In this document: positions 50,235 to 64,000 of the stretch, one piece after another
Layout: each line of letters begins with the position of its first letter
Position numbering within the stretch: position 1 is the first letter of the stretch
Source of the DNA: Antechinus flavipes
Taxonomy: Eukaryota
Length of the DNA stretch: 64,000 bases
Direction of reading: 5' to 3'
Assembly (NCBI RefSeq): GCF_016432865.1
Contig: NC_067398.1
Span: forward strand, 489,366,001-489,430,000
Notes under the pieces: generated by a model
Told to the model about the DNA's origin: nothing
Databases searched by the model: none
Seen by the model: the letters and a program-made list of their open reading frames with translations, nothing else
Made by a program: the position numbers and the translations under genes

Positions 50235-50490
50235 GTCTCAGTGGTGCACTGGATCAGGCGCTGAGCTTAGAGCCAAGAAAACCTGAATTCAAATGTGACC
50301 TATGAGATACACATTAGTATGGGACTTTGAGGAACTTAATCCGTTTTTGCCTCAGTTTTCTCATTTGTAGAGGGGGAATAAAACATCATAGGGTTGTTGT
50401 GAGGATCAGATGAAATAATAGTTGTTAAGTACTATGTAGAATGCCTGACCCATAAAAAGTACTATGTAAATATTAGCTATGATTATTATC
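50235..50490 (+). mobile_element. MIR, near full length
   Basis: CAGTGGTGCACTGGATCAGGCGCTGAG...CCTGAATTCAAAT...CCTCAGTTTTCTCATTTGTA...GGTTGTTGTGAGGATCAGATGA. Confidence 0.8.
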
Positions 50491-53914: not shown

Positions 53915-54125
53915 GGGGCAGCTAGATGGCCCAGTAGATAAGAGTTCTGGCCCTGGAGTCAGGGGAACTAAGTTTAAATCTAGCCTCAAATACTTAATAC
54001 TTGTTAGCTTTGTGACTGGGCAGATTGGTTAACTCCAATTGCCTCACAAAATAAATAAATGAATAGATAAATAAATGAAAAAATAAATATAATAAAATAA
54101 AAATAACCAAAAAAACTAATTTTAA
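53915..54125 (+). mobile_element. WSINE1-type SINE with expanded A-rich tail
   Basis: GGGGCAGCTAGATGG...CCCTGGAGTCAGG...CCAATTGCCTC then (TAAA)n. Confidence 0.85.
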
Positions 54126-54959
54126 GAAAAGTCATGTACTCTTTAATAAGAATAAATAAATAAATAAATGGAATTATAATATTTAAATCATTAAATAAAA
54201 ATAAAGAATAAGTAAATAAAAGAGTTTATATTTAAAGACTTATTACCATTAATTAACTCTAAACATGGTTTTTGAGAATGCCCATGAGCTTAATGTTTTG
54301 GGGTTTTCAATTTTTGATTTTAATTTTTCAAAGGTAGACAACCAAGTGCAATGGATTAAGATTTTCATAGATTTTATTTTTGTTTTGCTCTGAGAAGAAA
54401 TGCAGATCTCTGTATCAAACTTTAAAAAGATTTCAATGTATGTCAACTCTGGTAGTTATGAATCTATTCAAAAGTAAATGAAATATGTGCCATGTGTTGT
54501 AGTAGAACTTGATTTTTTAAAAAAAGAAAATTTTGATCAGCAAAACTTGTGACAAGTTTATTGAGACAATAAATGCTTTATTTACTAATTGGGCCATTTG
54601 GAAGATTTGTTTGTACTAGAGATCTCTAGTGAACATAATCCAAATTATAGGCATAATGAATCTTACTGACAAACTTGTAATGCTTTCCAGTTATATATAT
54701 ATATATATTTAAAATGTAATTAATTGAAAAATGTAACTATTCATATAATATATTTAAACTACTGATATGTGACAAAATGATGACCTTGAAGACAGACACA
54801 CGAACACCCATACATACATACACACACGAATTTGAGACAGGCTCTTTTCCATAAAAGCAACAAGAGTTTAAATTCATCAGATTTTAATGATTCACTCTCA
54901 CTCTCCTACCATCTCTCCCCTTTCTCCATTTATAATTATTATTTCATTTGGTTTTCACA

Positions 54960-55130
54960 ATAACCCTGGGGGGCGGAGTATGTGCCATTATCTCCATTTA
55001 TAGTTGAAGAAACTGAGACAGAGTTAGATGACTACCCAAGATCATGAGCTAGTTAACTTAGTAAACAGCAGTTCAGGTCTTGCTGACTCTAGGCTAAGCA
55101 CTTTACCCACTGTACTACCAAGCTGCTTCT
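54960..55130 (-). mobile_element. MIR fragment
   Basis: TTATCTCCATTTATAGTTGAAGAAACTGAGACAGAG...CTGACTCTAGG. Confidence 0.7.
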
Positions 55131-55689
55131 ATATTTGATTATATTAATAGAAGCAATAATAAAATATAGCAATAAAAACCAATCCTGGATAGATAGGTTT
55201 CCTCTAATCACTACCTAGAGACTGAATCTCTTATTGTATTTTGTATTTTATGTAAGTTGTAGAAAGAGCTGAACTTCCCTTTACCCTGTGCTATTGAGTA
55301 ATATGCGGTGAGCATATACTTTTTGCTGAGAAACTACATAGCTCCAAGAAAATAACATTAAAGTGATGGTTCTCAAAATTATCTTAATATATAATATTAT
55401 ACTAGAAGGAAAACTGATTCTGTCAGAGGTCCCAGATTGAAAATGCACTTCTGTCCACTACTCATCTTAAGACTTTGGTCAAGTCCGGGAATGCCCCTTC
55501 TCTTCAATTTCCTTATTGTAAAATGATCAGTTGGCAATAGTTACCTCTGAGATCCCTTCTAGCTTTAGATCTAGAGTATTCATTAATTATTTTGAATTTA
55601 AATTATATTGTTGTCAAAGGATCAATAAATACTAACAGTAGTGTTACATTTTTTTAAGTATGAAAAAATAAGGCATTTTCCTGTGCTTA

Positions 55690-55819
55690 TTTTGAAGAGA
55701 GAGCTATCCAAGCTCTCCATTGTTGTAAGAAACAGAGAGGTTATGCCTGTTGCTAAATTTGACAATCACCACATGTAAAGCACAGGTTCTCTGTGGTTCT
55801 GACAGCAGCAAAACTTTTG
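55690..55819. repeat. Left arm of long inverted repeat (pairs with 58065-58203)
   Basis: Hand alignment: 55690-55783 vs 58203-58110 complementary at 91/94; 55785-55819 vs 58099-58065 complementary at 33/35. Confidence 0.97.
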
Positions 55820-57364
55820 GACATCCCTTTATATCCAAAGCAGTTAGATACAGCAAAACAATAAATGCATGGATGGATAAATTCATAAATAAGTAGTAGT
55901 TGAATTACTCTTTAATTATAATTATTGATTTTCAATAATCATTAAATAGAATAAATGAAAAAATTATGAAGCCCAAGAAAACCTTTTTCATGTTATAAAT
56001 GGAAATTGCATGAAATATAGTTTTTCCAGTATTGAATTTTTTGGAGGGGTTAGGAGAGAGTTGTTCTGTCTCTTGAATCTCCATGAAATCATTATGAAAT
56101 TGAATTCTAAACAGTTTCATTAATAAATCAAGATATCTAGAATCTGAGTCACATCTTATACCCCACATTTAGTGCAAAGTGGAAGACTTTTTTTTTAAAT
56201 GCTGAGGGATATGCAGCTCTGTAGGACAGGCATAAAAGATGCTAATCTTTGACTTATGTTATGTGATTTGTTGAATATAGCCAGTGTTCTGGATGTAAGG
56301 AAAATAAAATTATCAATAATTTAGAACACAGTTCCTGCTTTTTGTTATACACATTTATTTATTATAACACTTTAAGAACACATTTTTTGGTAGAAATTTT
56401 CAAGTGGTTTTTGCTTTTAATCTTTAAAAGTTTTTTAGGAATAAAATAAGACCATAGCTTTTCTAGATCATTTTAGGGTAATATAATCGACAGGAAGAGG
56501 AAGGAAAAATTAATCATTGTTTATAAAGGTAACAATAGTTTTGGTTAAAGGAAATCTGTAGGTGTAGTTCACAGCAATTCCTTGTTGCAAAGGAAAGAAA
56601 GTAAGTGACAGTCATGGATCATATTGTTCCTTGTATTATTCTCTTGCCATCTTTGCTTTCTTTTTTTTTTTGTAATATTTAAATTTGCTTCCAATTCCAA
56701 ATGTTCAGTGGAACATTTATTAAATTACTTAGGATGTTCAAATCAATTTGCTATGGGTGCAGGGAATTTGAAGTCAAAAAGGAACATTTCATGTCCTCAA
56801 GATGGTTGTGAAATGTATGCTATTAAGTAAATACCAAGTTTTTAAAACCAAGTTAGTTTTTTCAGGGAAGATGGTGAGAATAACAGAGGGCCACAAAGTT
56901 CTAAATAGTAGTTTGTGGTAATAACCAGCTTCTTATGCTATTTCAACATCATCATCTCATCTTTTCCAATCGACCCATGCTTAGAAAAAGACCAGAGCTC
57001 CCAGCAATTATTTGATTGTGGCAATACTTATAGGACGTTGAGGTAGAAGGGACTGATCACCCTGCCCCATTTGTTGATTTGGTGGAAGGGAGGAGTAAGA
57101 TATAAGACATTTATGTGATTAAAATAATTTTGAGAACAAATTTTAATGCTATTTTTTAAGCTATGTATTTTCTCTGCACACGGTATACATATACGGTACC
57201 TTTTATCTTCCCTCAATAGTATAAGGGTAAAAAGGAGTTCACGTGCTTATACAAAATAAAATGGAAATTCAGTCTCTAGGTGGTGGTTAAGAGAAACATA
57301 TCTAGCCTGAGTTTGTTTTTATTGTTATATTTTCTTATTGTTTTTATGAATATAATCATATGTA

Positions 57365-57610
57365 GAGGTAGCTTAATGCAATGGGTAAAATGCTTAGTCT
57401 AGAATCAGGAAGATGTGAACTGAAAACCACCTTCAGACTTTGCCAGCTCTGTGATCTTGAGCGGTCATTTAACTCTGACTCAGTTTCCTCAAGTATAAAT
57501 AAGAATATAGCACCTACCCTCAGGGTTATTGTGAGAACCAAATAATGCTTGTAAAATGCTTAACACAGTGTCTGGCACAAAGTTAATATTATATAAATTT
57601 TAGCTGTTAT
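57365..57610 (+). mobile_element. MIR within the inverted-repeat spacer
   Basis: AGAATCAGGAAGA...CTCTGTGATCTTGAGC.GTCATTTAACTCTGACTCAGTTTCCTCA...GGTTATTGTGAGAA. Confidence 0.8.
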
Positions 57611-58025
57611 CTGTAGCAGTTATGGGCTGCTTTGAATGAGGGCAGTTCCCTAGTGAAGAGTAGAGTTAGGGATCAAAAGAGAAAGTTCCTATCTATTATG
57701 GATAGAGATGAATGTTGCTTAGGAAGAATGGAATCTTCCCCTCTGCCTCCCTCCTCTTGGGAAGGGGGAATGAGGAAACAGGATTGGGGTTCAGGAGATG
57801 GGTACCAACTTTTTCTTTCCACACCAGCACCTAGAGGTTACAAATGCATATTATTTCATGTAACTTTGCCAGGTATTAAGGGGAGGTATCTTGTTTTGCT
57901 TATAATTGTAGCTAGAAATCCACTTAGTGTTAAAATTGCCCTGTGTTCATTTTTTTATGAATAGTATTTGAGATACAGACTGAATTTTTCATAGTACTAT
58001 TGTCTGACACATTTTTTTCCCACAG

Positions 58026-58203
58026 ATGTACCTGCTGTTTTCAGTCAGATATGTCTGACAGAGGCAAAAGCTTTGCTGCTGTCATAACCACAGAGAACCA
58101 TCCCCTCCAGTGCTTTACATGTGGTGATTGTCAAATTTACCAACAGGCATAACCCCTCTGTTTCTTACAAGAATGGAGAGCTTGGATAGCTCTCTCTTCA
58201 AAA
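58026..58203 (+). other. Candidate cassette exon (178 nt, stops in all frames; poison or 5'UTR exon) of an unidentified host gene
   Basis: Branch point CTGAC (A at 58007), TTTTTTTCCC tract, CAG acceptor ending 58025; donor AAA|GTATGA at 58203/58204. Confidence 0.4.
58065..58203. repeat. Right arm of long inverted repeat (pairs with 55690-55819)
   Basis: Reverse complement of the left arm with 5 substitutions and one asymmetric internal loop (10 nt at 58100-58109 opposite 1 nt). Confidence 0.97.
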
Positions 58204-58269
58204 GTATGAAATGTGCTTTTTAGAAACTAGTATCCATCACCCTAACTCTAAAAAAGAAATATGAAGATT

Positions 58270-59250
58270 ACTTAGATGCTCAAAAAACTGAGTTAGAAGG
58301 CATCTCATAAGGTACCTAATCAAACCCTCTCCAAATTTCAGGATCCCCTTCTACAACATTTTTGATAGATGGGCATTTAATTTATTTTTAACTCTTTCAA
58401 TGATAGAAAGCTCATGATCTCCACTTCAAAGGCAGCTTATTCTATTTTTTAATTATCCCTTATCATTTAAAAAAGTTTATTTATCCAAAATTTGGATAAC
58501 TTTAACTCATTGACCCTAGTTTTGCCTTTAGGACCTTTATAACATAATCTAGCCTATATTGTAGTTGCCATAGTCCCTTTATTCTGTAGGCTAAATATCT
58601 TGAACTTCTTCCTAGGATGATATAATTTCCAAATATTTGACTATTTTGATTTCTTGGTGCCACTTCAATTTATCATCCCCCCCTTTAAAACATAGTATTA
58701 AGAACTCAAACATAATAAATATATGTTCTAGTATAACATTATCTTTATTGTTGTTGAACTTGAACTTCATTCCTTCTTAAGCAGAATTAGATTTTTTTTT
58801 AGTATCTACATTTTATTATCATACCACAAAGTAGTAAAATCTCTAAGCTGTTTTATTTTCTGCACATAAACTAAAACTAAAGTTAGGCGTTTTCTTTCTT
58901 GTATTTGTGTAACTGATTTTAAAAAGTGAAAAAAGAAACCACTAAATCTAATTTTTTAAAGTCAACCATATTAACTTTAGTTTTGTTTACTTGGTCCATC
59001 AATGAATCCCTCAAAATCCTTGTTAAAAATATATTTCTTAGACATTGTCGTAGTTATTCCATCACAGTTAAGCATTCTACAAATTTTCATTCAAGTTTAT
59101 GATATGATTTCTCACTAAGAAAAAGAATTCTTCCATCTGTATTAACATCAACCAACACTTTTGTTATTTACATCTTCATTATGGGTCAATCCACATTTCT
59201 CTTGTCTACAAAACCCATGTAGAATAGCATGTAAGGACTGTATAAGCTGA
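58270..59250 (-). mobile_element. Degraded L3/CR1 3' fragments
   Basis: GGATCCCCTTCTACAACAT...TTCAATGATAGAAAGCTCA...AAAGGCAGCTTATTC resembles antisense L3 3' end. Confidence 0.45.
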
Positions 59251-60113
59251 AGCAAAGACCAGTCTTAAAAATCAGGCACTGTGCAAGATAAATTACTTTT
59301 ATTAAGCTTTTTTTTTTTCTGCTTATCTTCTGTTTTGAATGTAAGCCCTATTTATTTCTGTACTTGATGCTTGACTCCACATTTGGTCAGAAACTTGTTA
59401 TATGTTTCATTTCCTCAAGTGTGATTGGGTGTTGGTAAGGGATCTATAGTAATTTGAATTGTTCTTGTGGGTTTGTGAATGAGGTGGTTTGTCTCATGGT
59501 TGTGCATGTTAATAATGTTGAGACTGAAAAGCAATAATCCAATACCATTTGGTGGCCTGTTCATATTCATACCCATCTGAAGACATAAAGCCTTCTATTT
59601 AATAAGCCTGAGCTTGACTGACCTAGACTTAACAACTTTGAAGAGTAACGACTATTATTCTTTGTGTCTCTGTGTAGATTTGTAATTTTTGTTTGATGGT
59701 TTTTGTGTGTGGTTATTGTGGTTGTTTTTTTTCCCTCCTCAATACAAACACAAAAAAAGTAATTTCAAAGCCATTATGACACTTTATAGGAAAATTTTAA
59801 TTTAATTTTTGCCAGTGACTTTGATAACTATTATTAAAATGTTAAAATAACAAATAAGTAATTTTTGTTGTTTTCTAGAAATATAGCAGTTAGTAAAAAT
59901 TCTAATACAAATACTGTTAATAATGTATTATCCCAAGAAATTCACAATACTTTTAAGTTATTATTTTTTGTTCATAAAATCAAAAACTAGCATAAATTGA
60001 TGAAGCTTTTGAAAAAGCACGTGATGTTTTGATTAGTTTTATTCCAGAAATTTTAGAGCTAAAATGAAAGATCGTGAAATGCGTTTTATATATATGTATG
60101 TGTGTATATATAT

Positions 60114-60146
<33 letters not shown>

Positions 60147-60576
60147 AACATTACTTTAAAGATTCAAGAATTTATAATTTCATCTTTATGTGTAGTCCTT
60201 TTATCTGATCATACCCTTTCCACGCCCCATGCTTTCATAGATGATTTACTGAATTTCTCTGGAAAAGAATCACCATTTTTGGCAATCAATGATTGTGATC
60301 TTTCCTTAGTTTAGCTAAGCTAATTCTGGAATGACAACTTCTTCAGGCTCATATGAACATCAAAAACTTTATAAAATGAGATTATCTATTGAGTCATTCT
60401 TATTTTTTGCTGTCAGTTTTAGCTCATTTATGAAGTGTCAAGAAATTAATTATGAGTATCCATGAATTAAATTCACTATACTAGATCATATGGAGCTTAA
60501 AGAGGATAGATGGGGTATAATGTTTTTGCCTAAGCAGTATTTGCTTGACGTAAGCAAAAAAAGTTTATCTGTGATA

Positions 60577-61591
60577 TTTTTTATTATAGCTTTTTACTTA
60601 CAAAACATATGCATGGGTAATTTTTCAACATTGACCCTTGCAAAACCTTCTGTTCCAACTTTTCCTCTCCTTCCCCCCACACCCTTCTCTAGATTGCAGG
60701 TAGTCCAATATATGTTAAATATGTTAAATCCAATATATGTATACATATTTATACAGTTATCTTGCTGCACAAGGAAAATTGGATCTAGAAATAAAGAAAA
60801 AAACCCGAGAAGGAAAACAAAAATGCAAGCAAAGAATAACAGAAAGAGGGGAAATGCTATGTTGTGGTTCATGCTCATTTCCCATAGTTCTCTCTCTGGG
60901 TGTAGGTAATTCTCTTCTTTACTGAACAATTGGAACTGGTTTGAATCATCTCATTGTTAAAGAGAGCCACGACCATCAGCATCGATCATTGTACAGTATC
61001 GTTGCTGAGGTATATAATGATCTCCTGGTTCTGCTCATTTCACTCAGCATCAGTTCATGTAAGTCTCGCCAGTCCTCTCTGTATTCATCCTGCTGGTCAT
61101 TCCTTACAGAACAATAATATTCCATCACATTCATATACCACAATTTACCCAACCATTCTCCAATTGATGGGCAGCCATTCATTTTCCAGCTTCTAGCCAC
61201 TACAAACAGGGCTGCCACAAACATTTTGGCACATACAGGTCCCTTTCCCTTCTTTAGTATCTCTTTGGGGTATAAGCCCAGTAGAAACACTGCTGGATCA
61301 AAGGGTATGCACAGTTTGATAACTTTTTGAGCATAGTTCCAGATTGCTCTCCAGAATGGCTGGATCTGTCCACAGTTCTACCAACAATGTATCAGTTTTC
61401 CTACATCCCCTCCAATCTTCAGCATTATTTTTTCCTATCATCTTAGCCAGTCTGACAAGTGTGTAGTGGTATCTCAAAGTTGTCTTAATTTGCATTTCTC
61501 TGATTAATAATGATTTGGAGCACCTTTTCATATAACTAGAAATAGTTTCAATTTCTTCATCTGAAAATTGTTCATATCCTTTGACCATTTA
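60577..61591 (-). mobile_element. 5'-truncated L1, about 1 kb (ORF2 C-terminus and 3'UTR)
   Basis: ORFs 61298-61588 (KSLLIREMQIKTTLRYH) and 60976-61290 (GLYPKEI...MFVAALFVVARSWK...CPSIGEWL.KLWY) are typical L1 ORF2 C-terminal motifs; T-run at 60577. Confidence 0.95.
60976..61588 (-). pseudogene. Disrupted L1 ORF2 C-terminal remnant
   Basis: Two consecutive ORF pieces with L1 ORF2 motifs; truncated and broken. Confidence 0.9.
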
Positions 61592-61624
61592 TATGATTTT
61601 TTTTTTAAAAAGCTGTTTTTAAAG

Positions 61625-61745
61625 AAAGAGTGGTAAGTTACTTGCCAGGGTCACACAACTAATAAATGATTGAGTGTAGATTTGAACTCAGATCCTTCAG
61701 ATCCCAGACCTAGCACTATATACATTGCACCACCAGCTGCCATCT
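61625..61745 (-). mobile_element. CORE-SINE fragment
   Basis: ACTTGCCAGGGTCACACAACTA...GATTTGAACTCAG. Confidence 0.7.
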
Positions 61746-62109
61746 TTGAATCTTAAGGTCACTTATTATTTGGGACTTAAAACACTTGTGTAATTTACCA
61801 TAATTCAAGAGAACCAAGACCAAATTTGCCAGCATTTTTATCTCCAATGTTTCCTTTAAAAAATCTGTAACCTGTTAGTTTCCATTGCTTTGGATTCTTC
61901 TTTGATACTTTGGTCTACAGAGTAAATTTCATTGATTCATTTGTTTCATTACTAGCAGAACATTCCAGTGTCTTCAGAGGACTTGAAAATTGTGATCTTA
62001 ATATATAATGCCAAGAATCTCCACATTGTTCTAAGTAGATCTACTTAATCAAAAATATATAATTTTGCTAAAGATCTTTGACATTTAAAGTGATGGTTGC
62101 TTCTGGCAC

Positions 62110-62253
62110 NNNNNNNNNNNNNNNNNNNNNNNNNNNNNNNNNNNNNNNNNNNNNNNNNNNNNNNNNNNNNNNNNNNNNNNNNNNNNNNNNNNNNNNNNNN
62201 NNNNNNNNNNNNNNNNNNNNNNNNNNNNNNNNNNNNNNNNNNNNNNNNNNNNN
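62110..62253. other. Assembly gap (144 N)
   Basis: N run. Confidence 1.
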
Positions 62254-62269
62254 TTCCCCCACTTTCTAG

Positions 62270-62460
62270 CTGCTGCTGCTTCTCCTTCTTCTTCTTCTTC
62301 CTCCTCCTACTCCTCCTCCTCTCTATCTTCTTCCTTCTCTTCCTCCTCCTCCTTCCTATCTTCCTCCTCCTCCTCCTCCTTCTCTCTGTCTTTCTCCTCC
62401 TCCTCCTCCTCCTCCTCTCTGTCTTCTTCTATCTCTTTCTTCCTCCTTTTCATTCCCTAG
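62270..62460. repeat. (TCC/TCT)n polypyrimidine simple repeat
   Basis: Read directly from sequence; explains the poly-L and poly-G ORFs at 62097 and 62356. Confidence 0.95.
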
Positions 62461-63499
62461 CTTTTTCTCCTTCTTTCTGTTCAGTAATAGAAGCTTTAAA
62501 ATGTGTTTGCAAATATTTACTTTATTTGTCAATATTGTGAAGATGTGAAGATTCCTGTAAGTGAAATTACTGATTTCTTGTGTTAGAGAAAACACTCAGA
62601 ATTTGTAATCTAATTGTTATTGTGCAAGTATTAATGCTTTGTTTTTAAAATACAGCATTGCTTTTTGTTTTGTTTTTAATGAAAAGAGGAAGCTGTAAAG
62701 GAAAACAATTTCCTTCCTTCAGTTATTTTAATTGTCACTTTTGGGAGGTTTTGTTTAATTTTATATGAGATTCCTTTTTACTATCTACCAGTAGGTGGAA
62801 TTCAATAATTTTTTCAGAATGGAGGCATATATTAACTACCTCTAGAACTTAAGCATGCCTCTAAAGGCCAAATGTGAGTACTACATTTAAATACTTCAAA
62901 TAGATGTTAAAATTATTTTTATAACCTGAAGATTTCTTTTATACTCTTCAATAGGGAAATTTCCTTTTGTAAGTTTGGGTCCATCATAAATGTAATATGT
63001 AATGAAAATTATTATATAGAAAGAAGAGTAGTATCAACTTCTCCATGACACTTCAACAAAAAAGAGAATTAGTAATTATATACTTGTCTTTGTGATGTTA
63101 GAAGAAAAGGAAGATTTTCTTGTTCAAAAGTGAATGTGTTTAGAGAGTTGACACAATTCCATTTATTGCTTAAAGTTTTCTTTTGGAAGGCTAAACTATA
63201 TTAATGTAATAAATGTAAATTTTACAGTAAAAAAAAAAGGTTTGTTTGTTACATATCTCAAAAGTAGAAGAATTTAATAACCTAGAGTAAGAAGTATAAA
63301 TTAGAAAACATGTGAGTTTTATTTTAATTGTGTGTGCTTTTTTATGATTTACCTTTTCATTCTTGTTGCCTACTGCTTTTTGAACTACATTTATGATTAC
63401 TCTTTCTCAATCAAAATTCTGATCCATATTTTATAGCAGCTTAAATTAATGCCAACTGATAAATATGAATCATGGTATATTTCTTTAATTCTGGATAGC

Positions 63500-63690
63500 A
63501 AGGCATTAGGATCTTATTTAAGATTTAGAGTTGTCCAGGACCTCAGAGATCGCCTAGATCAGTGTTTACATTTTACAAATGAGAAAACTGAGGTTCATAA
63601 ATGCAAAGTGACTGGCTTAAGATCTTACAGGAAGTACAAAGCCAAGATATGAACTCAGTTCTTCTGACTCCAAAATACTTAAGGAATTTT
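63500..63690 (-). mobile_element. MIR fragment
   Basis: ATTTAGAGTTG...CATTTTACAAATGAGAAAACTGAGG...GAACTCAG.TCTTCTGACTCCAAA. Confidence 0.75.
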
Positions 63691-63829
63691 GTACTTAATA
63701 ATTTAAGAAAATAATTAATATTGAACCTTTAGAGACTCTTTTATCATGAACTGGAATAGCGATGGCCTTCAAAAATTCTTTCAGGATGGGATAATTTGAC
63801 AAGTTAGTGATAATAATTTTAATGATGAT

Positions 63830-64000
63830 GAAAATGACAATAGCTGCAGTTAATATTTATATTAACCACTATGCGCCAAAAACTGTACTAAATATTTTAC
63901 AGTTATATCTCATTTGATACTCAAAACGTCTTTCAAATTAGGTGCTATTATTATTATCCCCATTATACAGATGAAGAAATTGAGGAGGCAAACAGTTAAG
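63830..64000 (-). mobile_element. MIR, running to the window edge
   Basis: TCTCATTTGATACTCA...TTATTATCCCCATTATACAGATGAAGAAATTGAGG. Confidence 0.75.

What the first reader, a model, noticed from the sequence alone, without database searches (positions are those of the whole stretch)
55690..58203. Long-range inverted repeat of unique sequence: candidate ~130-bp RNA duplex across a 2.2-kb spacer
Seen: 55690-55783 pairs with 58110-58203 (91/94) and 55785-55819 pairs with 58065-58099 (33/35). The two segments are separated by one asymmetric loop, and the spacer is 2245 nt. The arms resemble no SINE, LINE or MITE I recognise, and the flanks do not align. Known: long intron/exon duplexes with kb-scale loops are the architecture of ADAR editing-complementary sequences (e.g. 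GRIK1/GRIK2 Q/R) and of long-range structures that regulate splicing. Inference: about 96% complementarity in a region where most other old repeats are heavily decayed suggests selection for pairing, or else a recent inverted duplication or gene conversion.
Basis: partly seen in the sequence, partly recalled or inferred. Interest (0 to 1): 0.85.

Follow-up and report, generated by a model that had tools for sequence, protein, structure and literature searches.

The report
Young inverted duplication, potential RNA duplex
A 130-base stretch of unique non-coding DNA was copied in reverse-complement 2.2 kb away, most likely by a replication or repair template switch, so the near-perfect pairing reflects youth rather than any demonstrated selection for an RNA structure.

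Summary
The inverted repeat is real and lies exactly where reported. 55690-55819 pairs with 58065-58203 at 125 of 130 aligned positions, with one 1-nt versus 10-nt asymmetric loop and a 2245-nt spacer. It is far beyond chance and is the youngest repeat in the window (K2P 0.04; every other self-match is 80% identity or less). If both arms are on one transcript, the helix (about -212 kcal/mol) persists in the full 2.7-kb fold.

Nothing supports an ADAR-type editing or splicing element. The right arm's open frame has no Pfam, PDB or credible protein homolog, and the candidate exon has stops in all three frames. Equally good splice-motif pairs occur 29 times on this strand of the window. None of the five mismatches is a wobble pair.

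The footprint fits a mutational origin. The homology edges are razor-sharp and there is no transposon TIR or TSD. The same CAAAA(G)/TTTTG microhomology sits at both ends of each arm (null p about 0.002-0.008). Strand skew shows the spacer was not inverted. The best reading is a recent, lineage-specific, microhomology-mediated templated reverse-complement insertion, neutral until shown otherwise. It would behave like any intronic inverted repeat, as a promiscuous dsRNA/ADAR substrate.

Copy number genome-wide, orthologs and RNA evidence could not be tested here.

The parts
55690..55819 (.). Left arm of the inverted repeat (130 nt)
   Evidence: reverse complement of 58065-58203, 125/130 aligned columns identical. 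The copy of the right arm's open frame here carries an in-frame gap and a stop.
58065..58203 (.). Right arm of the inverted repeat (139 nt)
   Evidence: Contains the 50-aa open frame 58000-58152, which has no credible homolog.
55820..58064 (.). Spacer or loop (2245 nt), not inverted by the event
   Evidence: G+T excess is +0.073, the same sign as the window mean of +0.051. None of about 240 windows of 2245 nt reaches -0.073, the value the spacer would have had before a recent inversion.
58100..58109 (.). 10 nt (ATCCCCTCCA) present in the right arm opposite a single base (55784) in the left arm; forms the asymmetric internal loop
   Evidence: Alignment.
58065..58070 (+). CAAAAG microhomology at the start of the right arm
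   Evidence: the same hexamer recurs at 58199-58204, straddling the other arm end. Empirical null p(k>=6) = 0.002.
58199..58204 (+). Second CAAAAG, its last base lying one base outside the homology
55690..55694 (+). TTTTG at the start of the left arm (preceded by A, so 5 of 6 of the hexamer)
   Evidence: p(k>=5) = 0.008.
55814..55819 (+). CTTTTG at the end of the left arm, complementary to CAAAAG
58014..58025 (+). Acceptor-like motif (tttttttcccacag) 39 nt upstream of the right arm; unverified
   Evidence: Sequence. 40 comparable acceptor-like sites occur on the + strand of the window, 29 of them with a donor-like site 50-300 nt downstream.
58204..58209 (+). Donor-like GTATGA immediately after the right arm; unverified
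   Evidence: Sequence. It lies at the junction of the duplicated segment. 58026-58203 has stop codons in all three frames.

Best explanation
This is a recent, lineage-specific, local reverse-complement duplication of about 125-134 nt of unique non-coding sequence. It was most likely made in one step by a microhomology-mediated template switch. A nascent DNA end finishing in CAAAA(G) annealed to the complementary (C)TTTTG about 2.3 kb away and copied about 130 nt of the wrong strand. Its new CAAAA end then re-annealed at the original site, leaving the insertion bracketed by the microhomology and the spacer untouched. Which arm is the copy is unresolved. There is a slight lean to the right arm, which has 6-nt rather than 5-nt microhomology. 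The 96% complementarity reflects age (K2P about 0.04, roughly 10 million years with wide error), not demonstrated selection. If the + strand is transcribed through the region, as strand skew suggests, the two arms would form a helix of 94 bp plus 35 bp. That helix would behave like any long intronic inverted repeat: a promiscuous ADAR substrate and a possible modifier of local splicing. Shown here: the repeat, its youth, the sharp edges, the microhomology, the un-inverted spacer and the lack of coding content. Inferred: the template-switch mechanism, transcription, and any RNA-level consequence.
For: It is the youngest repeat in the window: all 12 other self-matches are 80% identity or less. 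K2P is 0.040 for the arms and 0.225 for the neighbouring older inverted pair. Homology ends abruptly and no flank shows similarity in any orientation. The terminal direct microhomology is CAAAAG at 58065-70 and 58199-204, and TTTTG/CTTTTG at 55690-94 and 55814-19, with an empirical null of 0.002 for 6 nt and 0.008 for 5 nt. The spacer keeps the local strand skew, so it was not inverted. There is no protein homology, no Rfam or tRNA-like feature, and no third copy in the window. The mechanism is documented: template switching creates reverse-complement repeats, and four-point type 1-4-3-2 gives an inverted repeat with an un-inverted spacer (PMC5453318). It can create perfect RNA stems in one event without selection (PMC8794818). 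Transcription of the + strand is suggested by GC skew +0.056 and TA skew +0.049, with G+T excess positive in 31 of 32 2-kb bins. That matches the skews described for the non-template strand of vertebrate genes (PMC2927911). The helix persists in the full-length fold.
Against: No outgroup or genome-wide copy count was available, so recency, polarity and single-locus status are inferred from one sequence. Published short template-switch events are tens of bp long and close together. This one is about 130 nt copied across 2.2 kb, so it lies at or beyond the range those authors modelled. The microhomology is only 5-6 nt of an A/T-rich motif and was noticed after the fact. The strand skew could be replication-associated rather than transcriptional. 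The exact coincidence of the right arm's end with a GT donor-like motif downstream of a good acceptor-like motif is unexplained by a purely neutral reading, except as chance or as a by-product of the insertion.
Confidence: 0.68

Rival explanations
1. The arms are two members of a dispersed, young, low- or medium-copy repeat family (a transposon or LTR fragment, or a MITE) that happen to lie in opposite orientation 2.2 kb apart.
For: Genome-wide copy number could not be tested. The window is repeat-rich, with MIR-like SINE copies and L1 ORF2 remnants. Both copies share the same two end points, as full-length small elements would.
Against: There is no third copy, even a partial one, in 64 kb. 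There is no A/B-box or tRNA-like part, no tail, and no TIR within an arm. The 55690-58203 unit has no TSD (and direct reading). There are no hits in viral or metagenome contigs. Two random members of a family lying 2.2 kb apart, with none elsewhere in the window, is improbable. The identical flanking pentamer at both copies would require a site-specific element of unknown type.
Confidence: 0.12
2. It is a selected long-range RNA duplex. The left arm would be an intronic complementary sequence that pairs with a regulated (poison or 5'UTR) exon at 58026-58203 and masks its 5' splice site, or directs ADAR editing, in a gene on the + strand.
For: The right arm ends exactly at a GT donor-like motif and lies 39 nt after a strong acceptor-like motif (scan note s1-183210). 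+ strand skew suggests transcription in the right direction. The helix is very stable and survives the full-length fold.
Against: There is no coding content or homology, and stops occur in all frames. 29 comparable pseudo-exons lie on this strand of the window. None of the 5 mismatches is a wobble pair on the + RNA: they are G.G, A.C, C.C, C.U and A.C. Known conserved ADAR targets number only a few dozen and are old, imperfect structures, while most editing lies in lineage-specific inverted repeats (PMC4053846). The sharp edges with microhomology are the untouched footprint of the mutational event.
Confidence: 0.07
3. It is an inversion of the 2.2-kb segment through staggered breaks, which duplicates the sequence between the nicks in inverted orientation at the two ends.
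For: This model gives inverted repeats at the ends of a segment. With two staggered breaks it would also give the observed interleaved order A, B, A', B' of the two inverted pairs.
Against: The spacer's G+T excess (+0.073) has the same sign as the rest of the window. If recently inverted it would have started at -0.073, which no window of that size shows. The two pairs differ nearly six-fold in divergence (K2P 0.040 vs 0.225) and are not adjacent, so they were not made by one event.
Confidence: 0.04
4. It is an old duplication kept similar by gene conversion, or it is an assembly artefact.
Against: The arms are short for efficient mammalian gene conversion (my own knowledge) and show no mosaic of identical and diverged tracts. 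An artefactual foldback would be adjacent and identical. It would not be separated by 2.2 kb of unique sequence, nor carry five substitutions and a 9-nt length difference.
Confidence: 0.05

Closest known systems
Template-switch mutations (four-point model, type 1-4-3-2 / 3-2-1-4; Loytynoja & Goldman 2017, PMC5453318; Monttinen & Loytynoja 2022, PMC8794818)
   Same: A reverse-complement copy of nearby sequence is inserted in one event. The edges are sharp, the spacer is left un-inverted, and a perfect stem is created without selection. Microhomology lies at the switch points.
   Different: The published events are mostly tens of bp and within a short distance. Here about 130 nt were copied across 2.2 kb, closer to the small end of FoSTeS/MMBIR-type templated insertions. 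The ancestral state is not observed here.
Inverted-repeat SINE pairs in introns and UTRs (for example inverted Alus) as promiscuous ADAR substrates
   Same: It is a lineage-specific, long, near-perfect intramolecular dsRNA with a kb-scale loop. The expected outcome is clustered hyper-editing. Most editing sites lie in such repeats, and opossum transcripts do show hyper-editing (PMC4053846, PMC4365171).
   Different: The arms are unique sequence, not SINEs: there is no other copy in the window and no tRNA-like part or tail.
Exon/intron editing-site complementary sequence duplexes (GRIA2 and GRIK1/2 Q/R sites)
   Same: Two complementary segments lie on one putative pre-mRNA, separated by about 2 kb.
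   Different: Those pair a conserved coding exon with an intron, are imperfect and are ancient. Here there is no coding exon, the pairing is near perfect and the pair is young. Editing is untested.
Intronic complementary sequences that promote back-splicing or exon skipping
   Same: Inverted complementary sequences bracket 2.2 kb of transcript. MIR-type and non-repeat complementary sequences are known to do this (PMC7371899 title and abstract).
   Different: No verified exon lies inside or beside the loop, and no RNA data are available.

Membership tests
ADAR editing-site complementary sequence (ECS) duplex of the GRIA2/GRIK type | One arm overlaps a conserved coding exon that carries the recoded site | tested here: not met
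   The open frame through the right arm has no Pfam match and no PDB match better than E = 1.4. Among 1.84 billion representatives the only hit is a low-complexity tandem-repeat protein. 58026-58203 has stops in all three frames.
ADAR editing-site complementary sequence (ECS) duplex of the GRIA2/GRIK type | Both arms are conserved across distant species, with pairing maintained | not testable with these tools
   No vertebrate genome collection is available. Handles tried found nothing.
ADAR editing-site complementary sequence (ECS) duplex of the GRIA2/GRIK type | A-to-I editing is observed in RNA | not testable with these tools
   No RNA-seq access.
Template-switch / microhomology-mediated templated insertion | A reverse-complement copy of a nearby segment with abrupt ends | tested here: met
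Template-switch / microhomology-mediated templated insertion | Microhomology at the switch points | tested here: met
   CAAAAG lies at 58065-70 and 58199-204, and TTTTG/CTTTTG at 55690-94 and 55814-19. Null p is 0.002 for 6 nt and 0.008 for 5 nt. The motif was noticed post hoc.
Template-switch / microhomology-mediated templated insertion | The ancestral state lacks one copy (outgroup with an empty site) | not testable with these tools
   No orthologous sequence is available.
DNA transposon or MITE with terminal inverted repeats (unit 55690-58203) | A target-site duplication immediately flanks the two TIRs | tested here: not met
   The left flank ends ...GTGCTTA and the right flank starts GTATGAA.... 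Flank comparisons are at chance level.
DNA transposon or MITE with terminal inverted repeats (unit 55690-58203) | Multiple copies in the genome | tested here: inconclusive
   Only these two arm copies occur in 64 kb. The whole genome is not searchable here.
SINE pair (inverted-Alu-like) | The arms are SINE copies (tRNA/7SL-derived head, tail, many copies) | tested here: not met
   No tRNA-like structure, no Rfam match and no other copies in the window.
Staggered-break inversion with inverted duplications | The segment between the repeats is inverted relative to the ancestor | tested here: not met
   The spacer's strand skew matches its surroundings. This is indirect and needs an outgroup for proof.

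The most novel reading that the evidence does not exclude
The inverted copy was recruited soon after it arose. It would base-pair with a newly formed non-coding (poison or 5'UTR) exon at 58026-58203 and cover its 5' splice site up to the last exonic base. That would give a marsupial-lineage-specific RNA switch, or a site-selective ADAR target, born in a single template-switch mutation.
Probability: 0.05. Interest if true: 0.65.

Novelty: new member of a known kind. Interest (0 to 1): 0.25.

Why it matters
It is a clean example, resolvable at single-base level, of how a long and nearly perfect RNA stem can appear in one mutational step from unique sequence, over a longer distance and length than the short template switches usually catalogued. 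Such events supply raw material for dsRNA, ADAR editing and splicing control. They are also a trap for structure scans, because high complementarity by itself says 'young', not 'selected'. Unchecked scan notes report similar short intronic inverted duplications elsewhere in this genome. The class may therefore be worth counting genome-wide rather than studying locus by locus.

Tried and rejected
1. Coding-exon or LIM-like zinc-finger reading of the right arm's frame (C-x2-C...H-x3-C-x2-C-x2-C). Pfam gave nothing relevant. The best PDB match was leupaxin at E = 1.4. The exhaustive HMMER search gave only a low-complexity artefact. Rejected.

2. A TSD-like 'AAGTATGAAA...TGTGCTT' motif left of the left arm and right of the right arm. 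The flank alignments are at chance. Rejected.

3. Retrocopy of a spliced exon, suggested because the arm edge equals the donor site. The sequence beyond the left arm has no match downstream in the window, and no poly(A) plus TSD can be read from the sequence. Rejected, although a next exon outside the window cannot be excluded.

4. A single event creating both interleaved inverted pairs. Their divergences differ nearly six-fold. Rejected.

5. Staggered-break inversion. The spacer skew argues against it.

6. Fetching orthologous or paralogous DNA. The 110-aa spacer ORF had no homologs, exact scans of metagenome and viral contigs gave 0 hits, and the scan index had nothing by sequence.

7. Known RNA families, tRNA-like parts and tandem repeats. 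None were found.

8. Naming the host gene from coding exons in the window. No convincing exon or CpG island was found.

Full report
**Observation**

The inverted repeat exists exactly as described. The repeat finder reports arms 55690-55786/58107-58203 (96%) and 55785-55819/58065-58099 (94%). A gapped alignment joins them into one 130-nt versus 139-nt pair with 125 of 130 aligned columns identical. The mismatches are at 55722, 55738, 55753, 55799 and 55813. One length difference puts a single base (55784) opposite ten bases (58100-58109). The spacer 55820-58064 is 2245 nt.

Chance is excluded. The within-window blastn E-value is 7e-38. A 29-mer shared by both arms has an expectation of 0.00 in dinucleotide shuffles.

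As RNA, the two arms would pair with about -212 kcal/mol (+ strand transcript) or -220 kcal/mol (- strand). When the whole 2714-nt region is folded, 124 or 123 of the arm-to-arm pairs are kept in the minimum-free-energy structure. The long-range helix is therefore thermodynamically dominant if both arms are on one molecule.

**Surroundings**

The window is AT-rich (about 33% G+C) mammalian-type DNA. It carries LINE-1 ORF2 remnants at 60976-61588 on the - strand and MIR-like SINE copies. Unchecked scan notes describe the genome as marsupial. No convincing coding exon or CpG island is visible, and no Rfam family reaches threshold anywhere in the window.

The + strand has a steady G+T excess. The mean is +0.051, it is positive in 31 of 32 2-kb bins, GC skew is +0.056 and TA skew is +0.049. 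These values match the skews described for the non-template strand of vertebrate genes (PMC2927911). The region is therefore probably intronic in a gene transcribed left to right, although replication-associated skew cannot be excluded.

A second inverted pair is interleaved with the reported one: 54946-55394 against 57111-57543. It has 81% substitution identity and K2P 0.225, and its first 170 nt or so are a MIR-like SINE. The arm pair has K2P 0.040. The two pairs are not collinear (order A, B, A', B') and differ nearly six-fold in divergence, so they are separate events.

**What the arms are not**

- **Not a recognisable coding exon.** One frame is open through the right arm (58000-58152, 50 aa) and shows a cysteine/histidine spacing reminiscent of a LIM finger. 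It has no relevant Pfam match and no PDB match better than E = 1.4. In an exhaustive HMMER search of 1.84 billion representatives, the only hit is a low-complexity tandem-repeat protein matched in four weak stretches.
- **Not a distinctive exon.** The candidate exon 58026-58203, noted by another reader (s1-183210), has stops in all three frames. Motif pairs of the same quality occur 29 times on this strand of the window.
- **Not a SINE.** The arms have no tRNA-like part, no Rfam similarity even at permissive thresholds, no tandem structure and no third copy in the window.
- **Not a transposon.** Read as an element with 130-bp terminal inverted repeats, the unit 55690-58203 lacks a target-site duplication. 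A tempting 'AAGTATGAAA...TGTGCTT' motif in the flanks is at chance level.

**How it most likely arose**

The homology ends abruptly, and 100-nt flanks on all four sides are unrelated in either orientation. Each arm begins and ends with the same pentamer in direct orientation.

- **Left arm:** TTTTG at 55690-94 and CTTTTG at 55814-19.
- **Right arm:** CAAAAG at 58065-70 and CAAAAG again at 58199-204, the last G lying outside the homology.

For random 139-nt segments of this window, such a terminal repeat of 6 nt or more occurs with probability 0.002, and of 5 nt or more with probability 0.008.

This is what a switch-and-return template switch predicts. A nascent end ...CAAAAG anneals to the complementary CTTTTG 2.3 kb away and copies about 130 nt of the wrong strand. 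It acquires a new ...CAAAA end and re-anneals at the site it left. The mirror-image scenario, with the left arm as the copy, works with 5-nt microhomology at both switches. The direction is therefore unresolved, with a slight lean to the right arm as the copy.

A staggered-break inversion would also give terminal inverted duplications. It is disfavoured because the spacer has the same strand skew as its surroundings (+0.073). A recent inversion would imply a starting value of -0.073, which none of about 240 windows of the same size shows.

The mechanism is documented. Template switching creates reverse-complement repeats, and four-point type 1-4-3-2 leaves the spacer un-inverted (PMC5453318). 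It can create perfect RNA stems in one step without selection (PMC8794818). The present case is longer (about 130 nt) and longer-range (2.2 kb) than the events those authors modelled, and is closer to small microhomology-mediated templated insertions.

**Selection or youth**

With K2P 0.04 and typical mammalian neutral rates of 1-2.5e-9 per site per year (my own knowledge), the copy is about 8-20 million years old. Five substitutions allow a several-fold error either way.

The five mismatches are spread evenly along the arms. On the + RNA they are G.G, A.C, C.C, C.U and A.C, and none is a wobble pair. There is no residual similarity in the flanks of the kind expected if a selected core were the remnant of an older, larger duplication.

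All other repeats in the window are 80% identical or less, but that only shows they are older. Nothing here requires selection for pairing. The data also cannot exclude it, because compensated changes are invisible without an outgroup.

**What it would do**

This part is inferred. If the + strand is transcribed through both arms, the pre-mRNA would carry a helix of 94 bp plus 35 bp. Long near-perfect dsRNA is edited promiscuously by ADARs (my own knowledge). Most known editing lies in lineage-specific inverted repeats, and only about 59 sites are conserved among mammals (PMC4053846). Opossum transcripts show hyper-editing at rates like other non-primate mammals (PMC4365171).

The duplex ends at the base before a GT donor-like motif, so it could also occlude that site if it is ever used. 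These effects are what any intronic inverted repeat would have, and there is no evidence that they matter here.

**Comparison and verdict**

It works like an inverted-SINE-type dsRNA but is made of unique sequence. It is not a member of the ECS class, because the defining exon is not met. Its origin fits the template-switch class, with the outgroup test outstanding.

Unchecked scan notes list similar short inverted duplications in other introns of this genome (s1-184913 and s1-189897). If they hold, this is a recurrent mutational product.

The finding is real, well delimited and mechanistically tidy, but ordinary in kind. Interest is 0.25. The functional reading keeps about 5-7% probability pending orthologs and RNA-seq.

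Noticed in passing
window 54946-55394 and 57111-57543: An older inverted pair is interleaved with the reported one (order A, B, A', B'). It spans about 450 nt with 81% substitution identity and K2P 0.225. Its first 170 nt or so are a MIR-like SINE (also matching 50241-50428), but the remaining 276 nt or so match only each other. It could be an older local inverted duplication or a composite repeat. A pre-existing inverted repeat might also have favoured the later template switch.
   Followed up: partly
window 1-64000: The + strand has a consistent G+T excess (mean +0.051, positive in 31 of 32 2-kb bins). This suggests the whole window is intronic in a + strand gene, or lies on one side of a replication origin. 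The only negative bin is 54001-56000, which holds an A-rich (AAAT)n-like stretch.
   Followed up: partly
window 58001-64000: GC skew changes sign after about 58 kb (+0.16 in 56-58 kb, then -0.10, -0.11 and -0.08) while AT skew stays negative. The change coincides with antisense L1 remnants but is otherwise unexplained.
   Followed up: no
window 60976-61588 (- strand): Two adjacent open frames (104 and 96 aa) look like C-terminal LINE-1 ORF2 remnants. Related decayed copies lie at about 43.7-44.5 kb and 38.6 kb (self-matches).
   Followed up: no
window about 43.3-44.2 kb, 46.9-47.1 kb, 62.1-62.3 kb: Runs of N (780 in all) are masked or are gaps.
   Followed up: no
window 62247-62545: A pyrimidine-rich low-complexity tract (CT/CCT-like) translates as poly-Leu/Pro/Ser in several frames.
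   Followed up: no
other windows of this genome (scan notes s1-184913, s1-189897): Other first-reader notes describe a 178-bp inverted duplication in PRKACA intron 1 and a 263-bp, 99.2% identical inverted repeat in SWI5 intron 2. Short young intronic inverted duplications may be a recurrent class in this genome.
   Followed up: no
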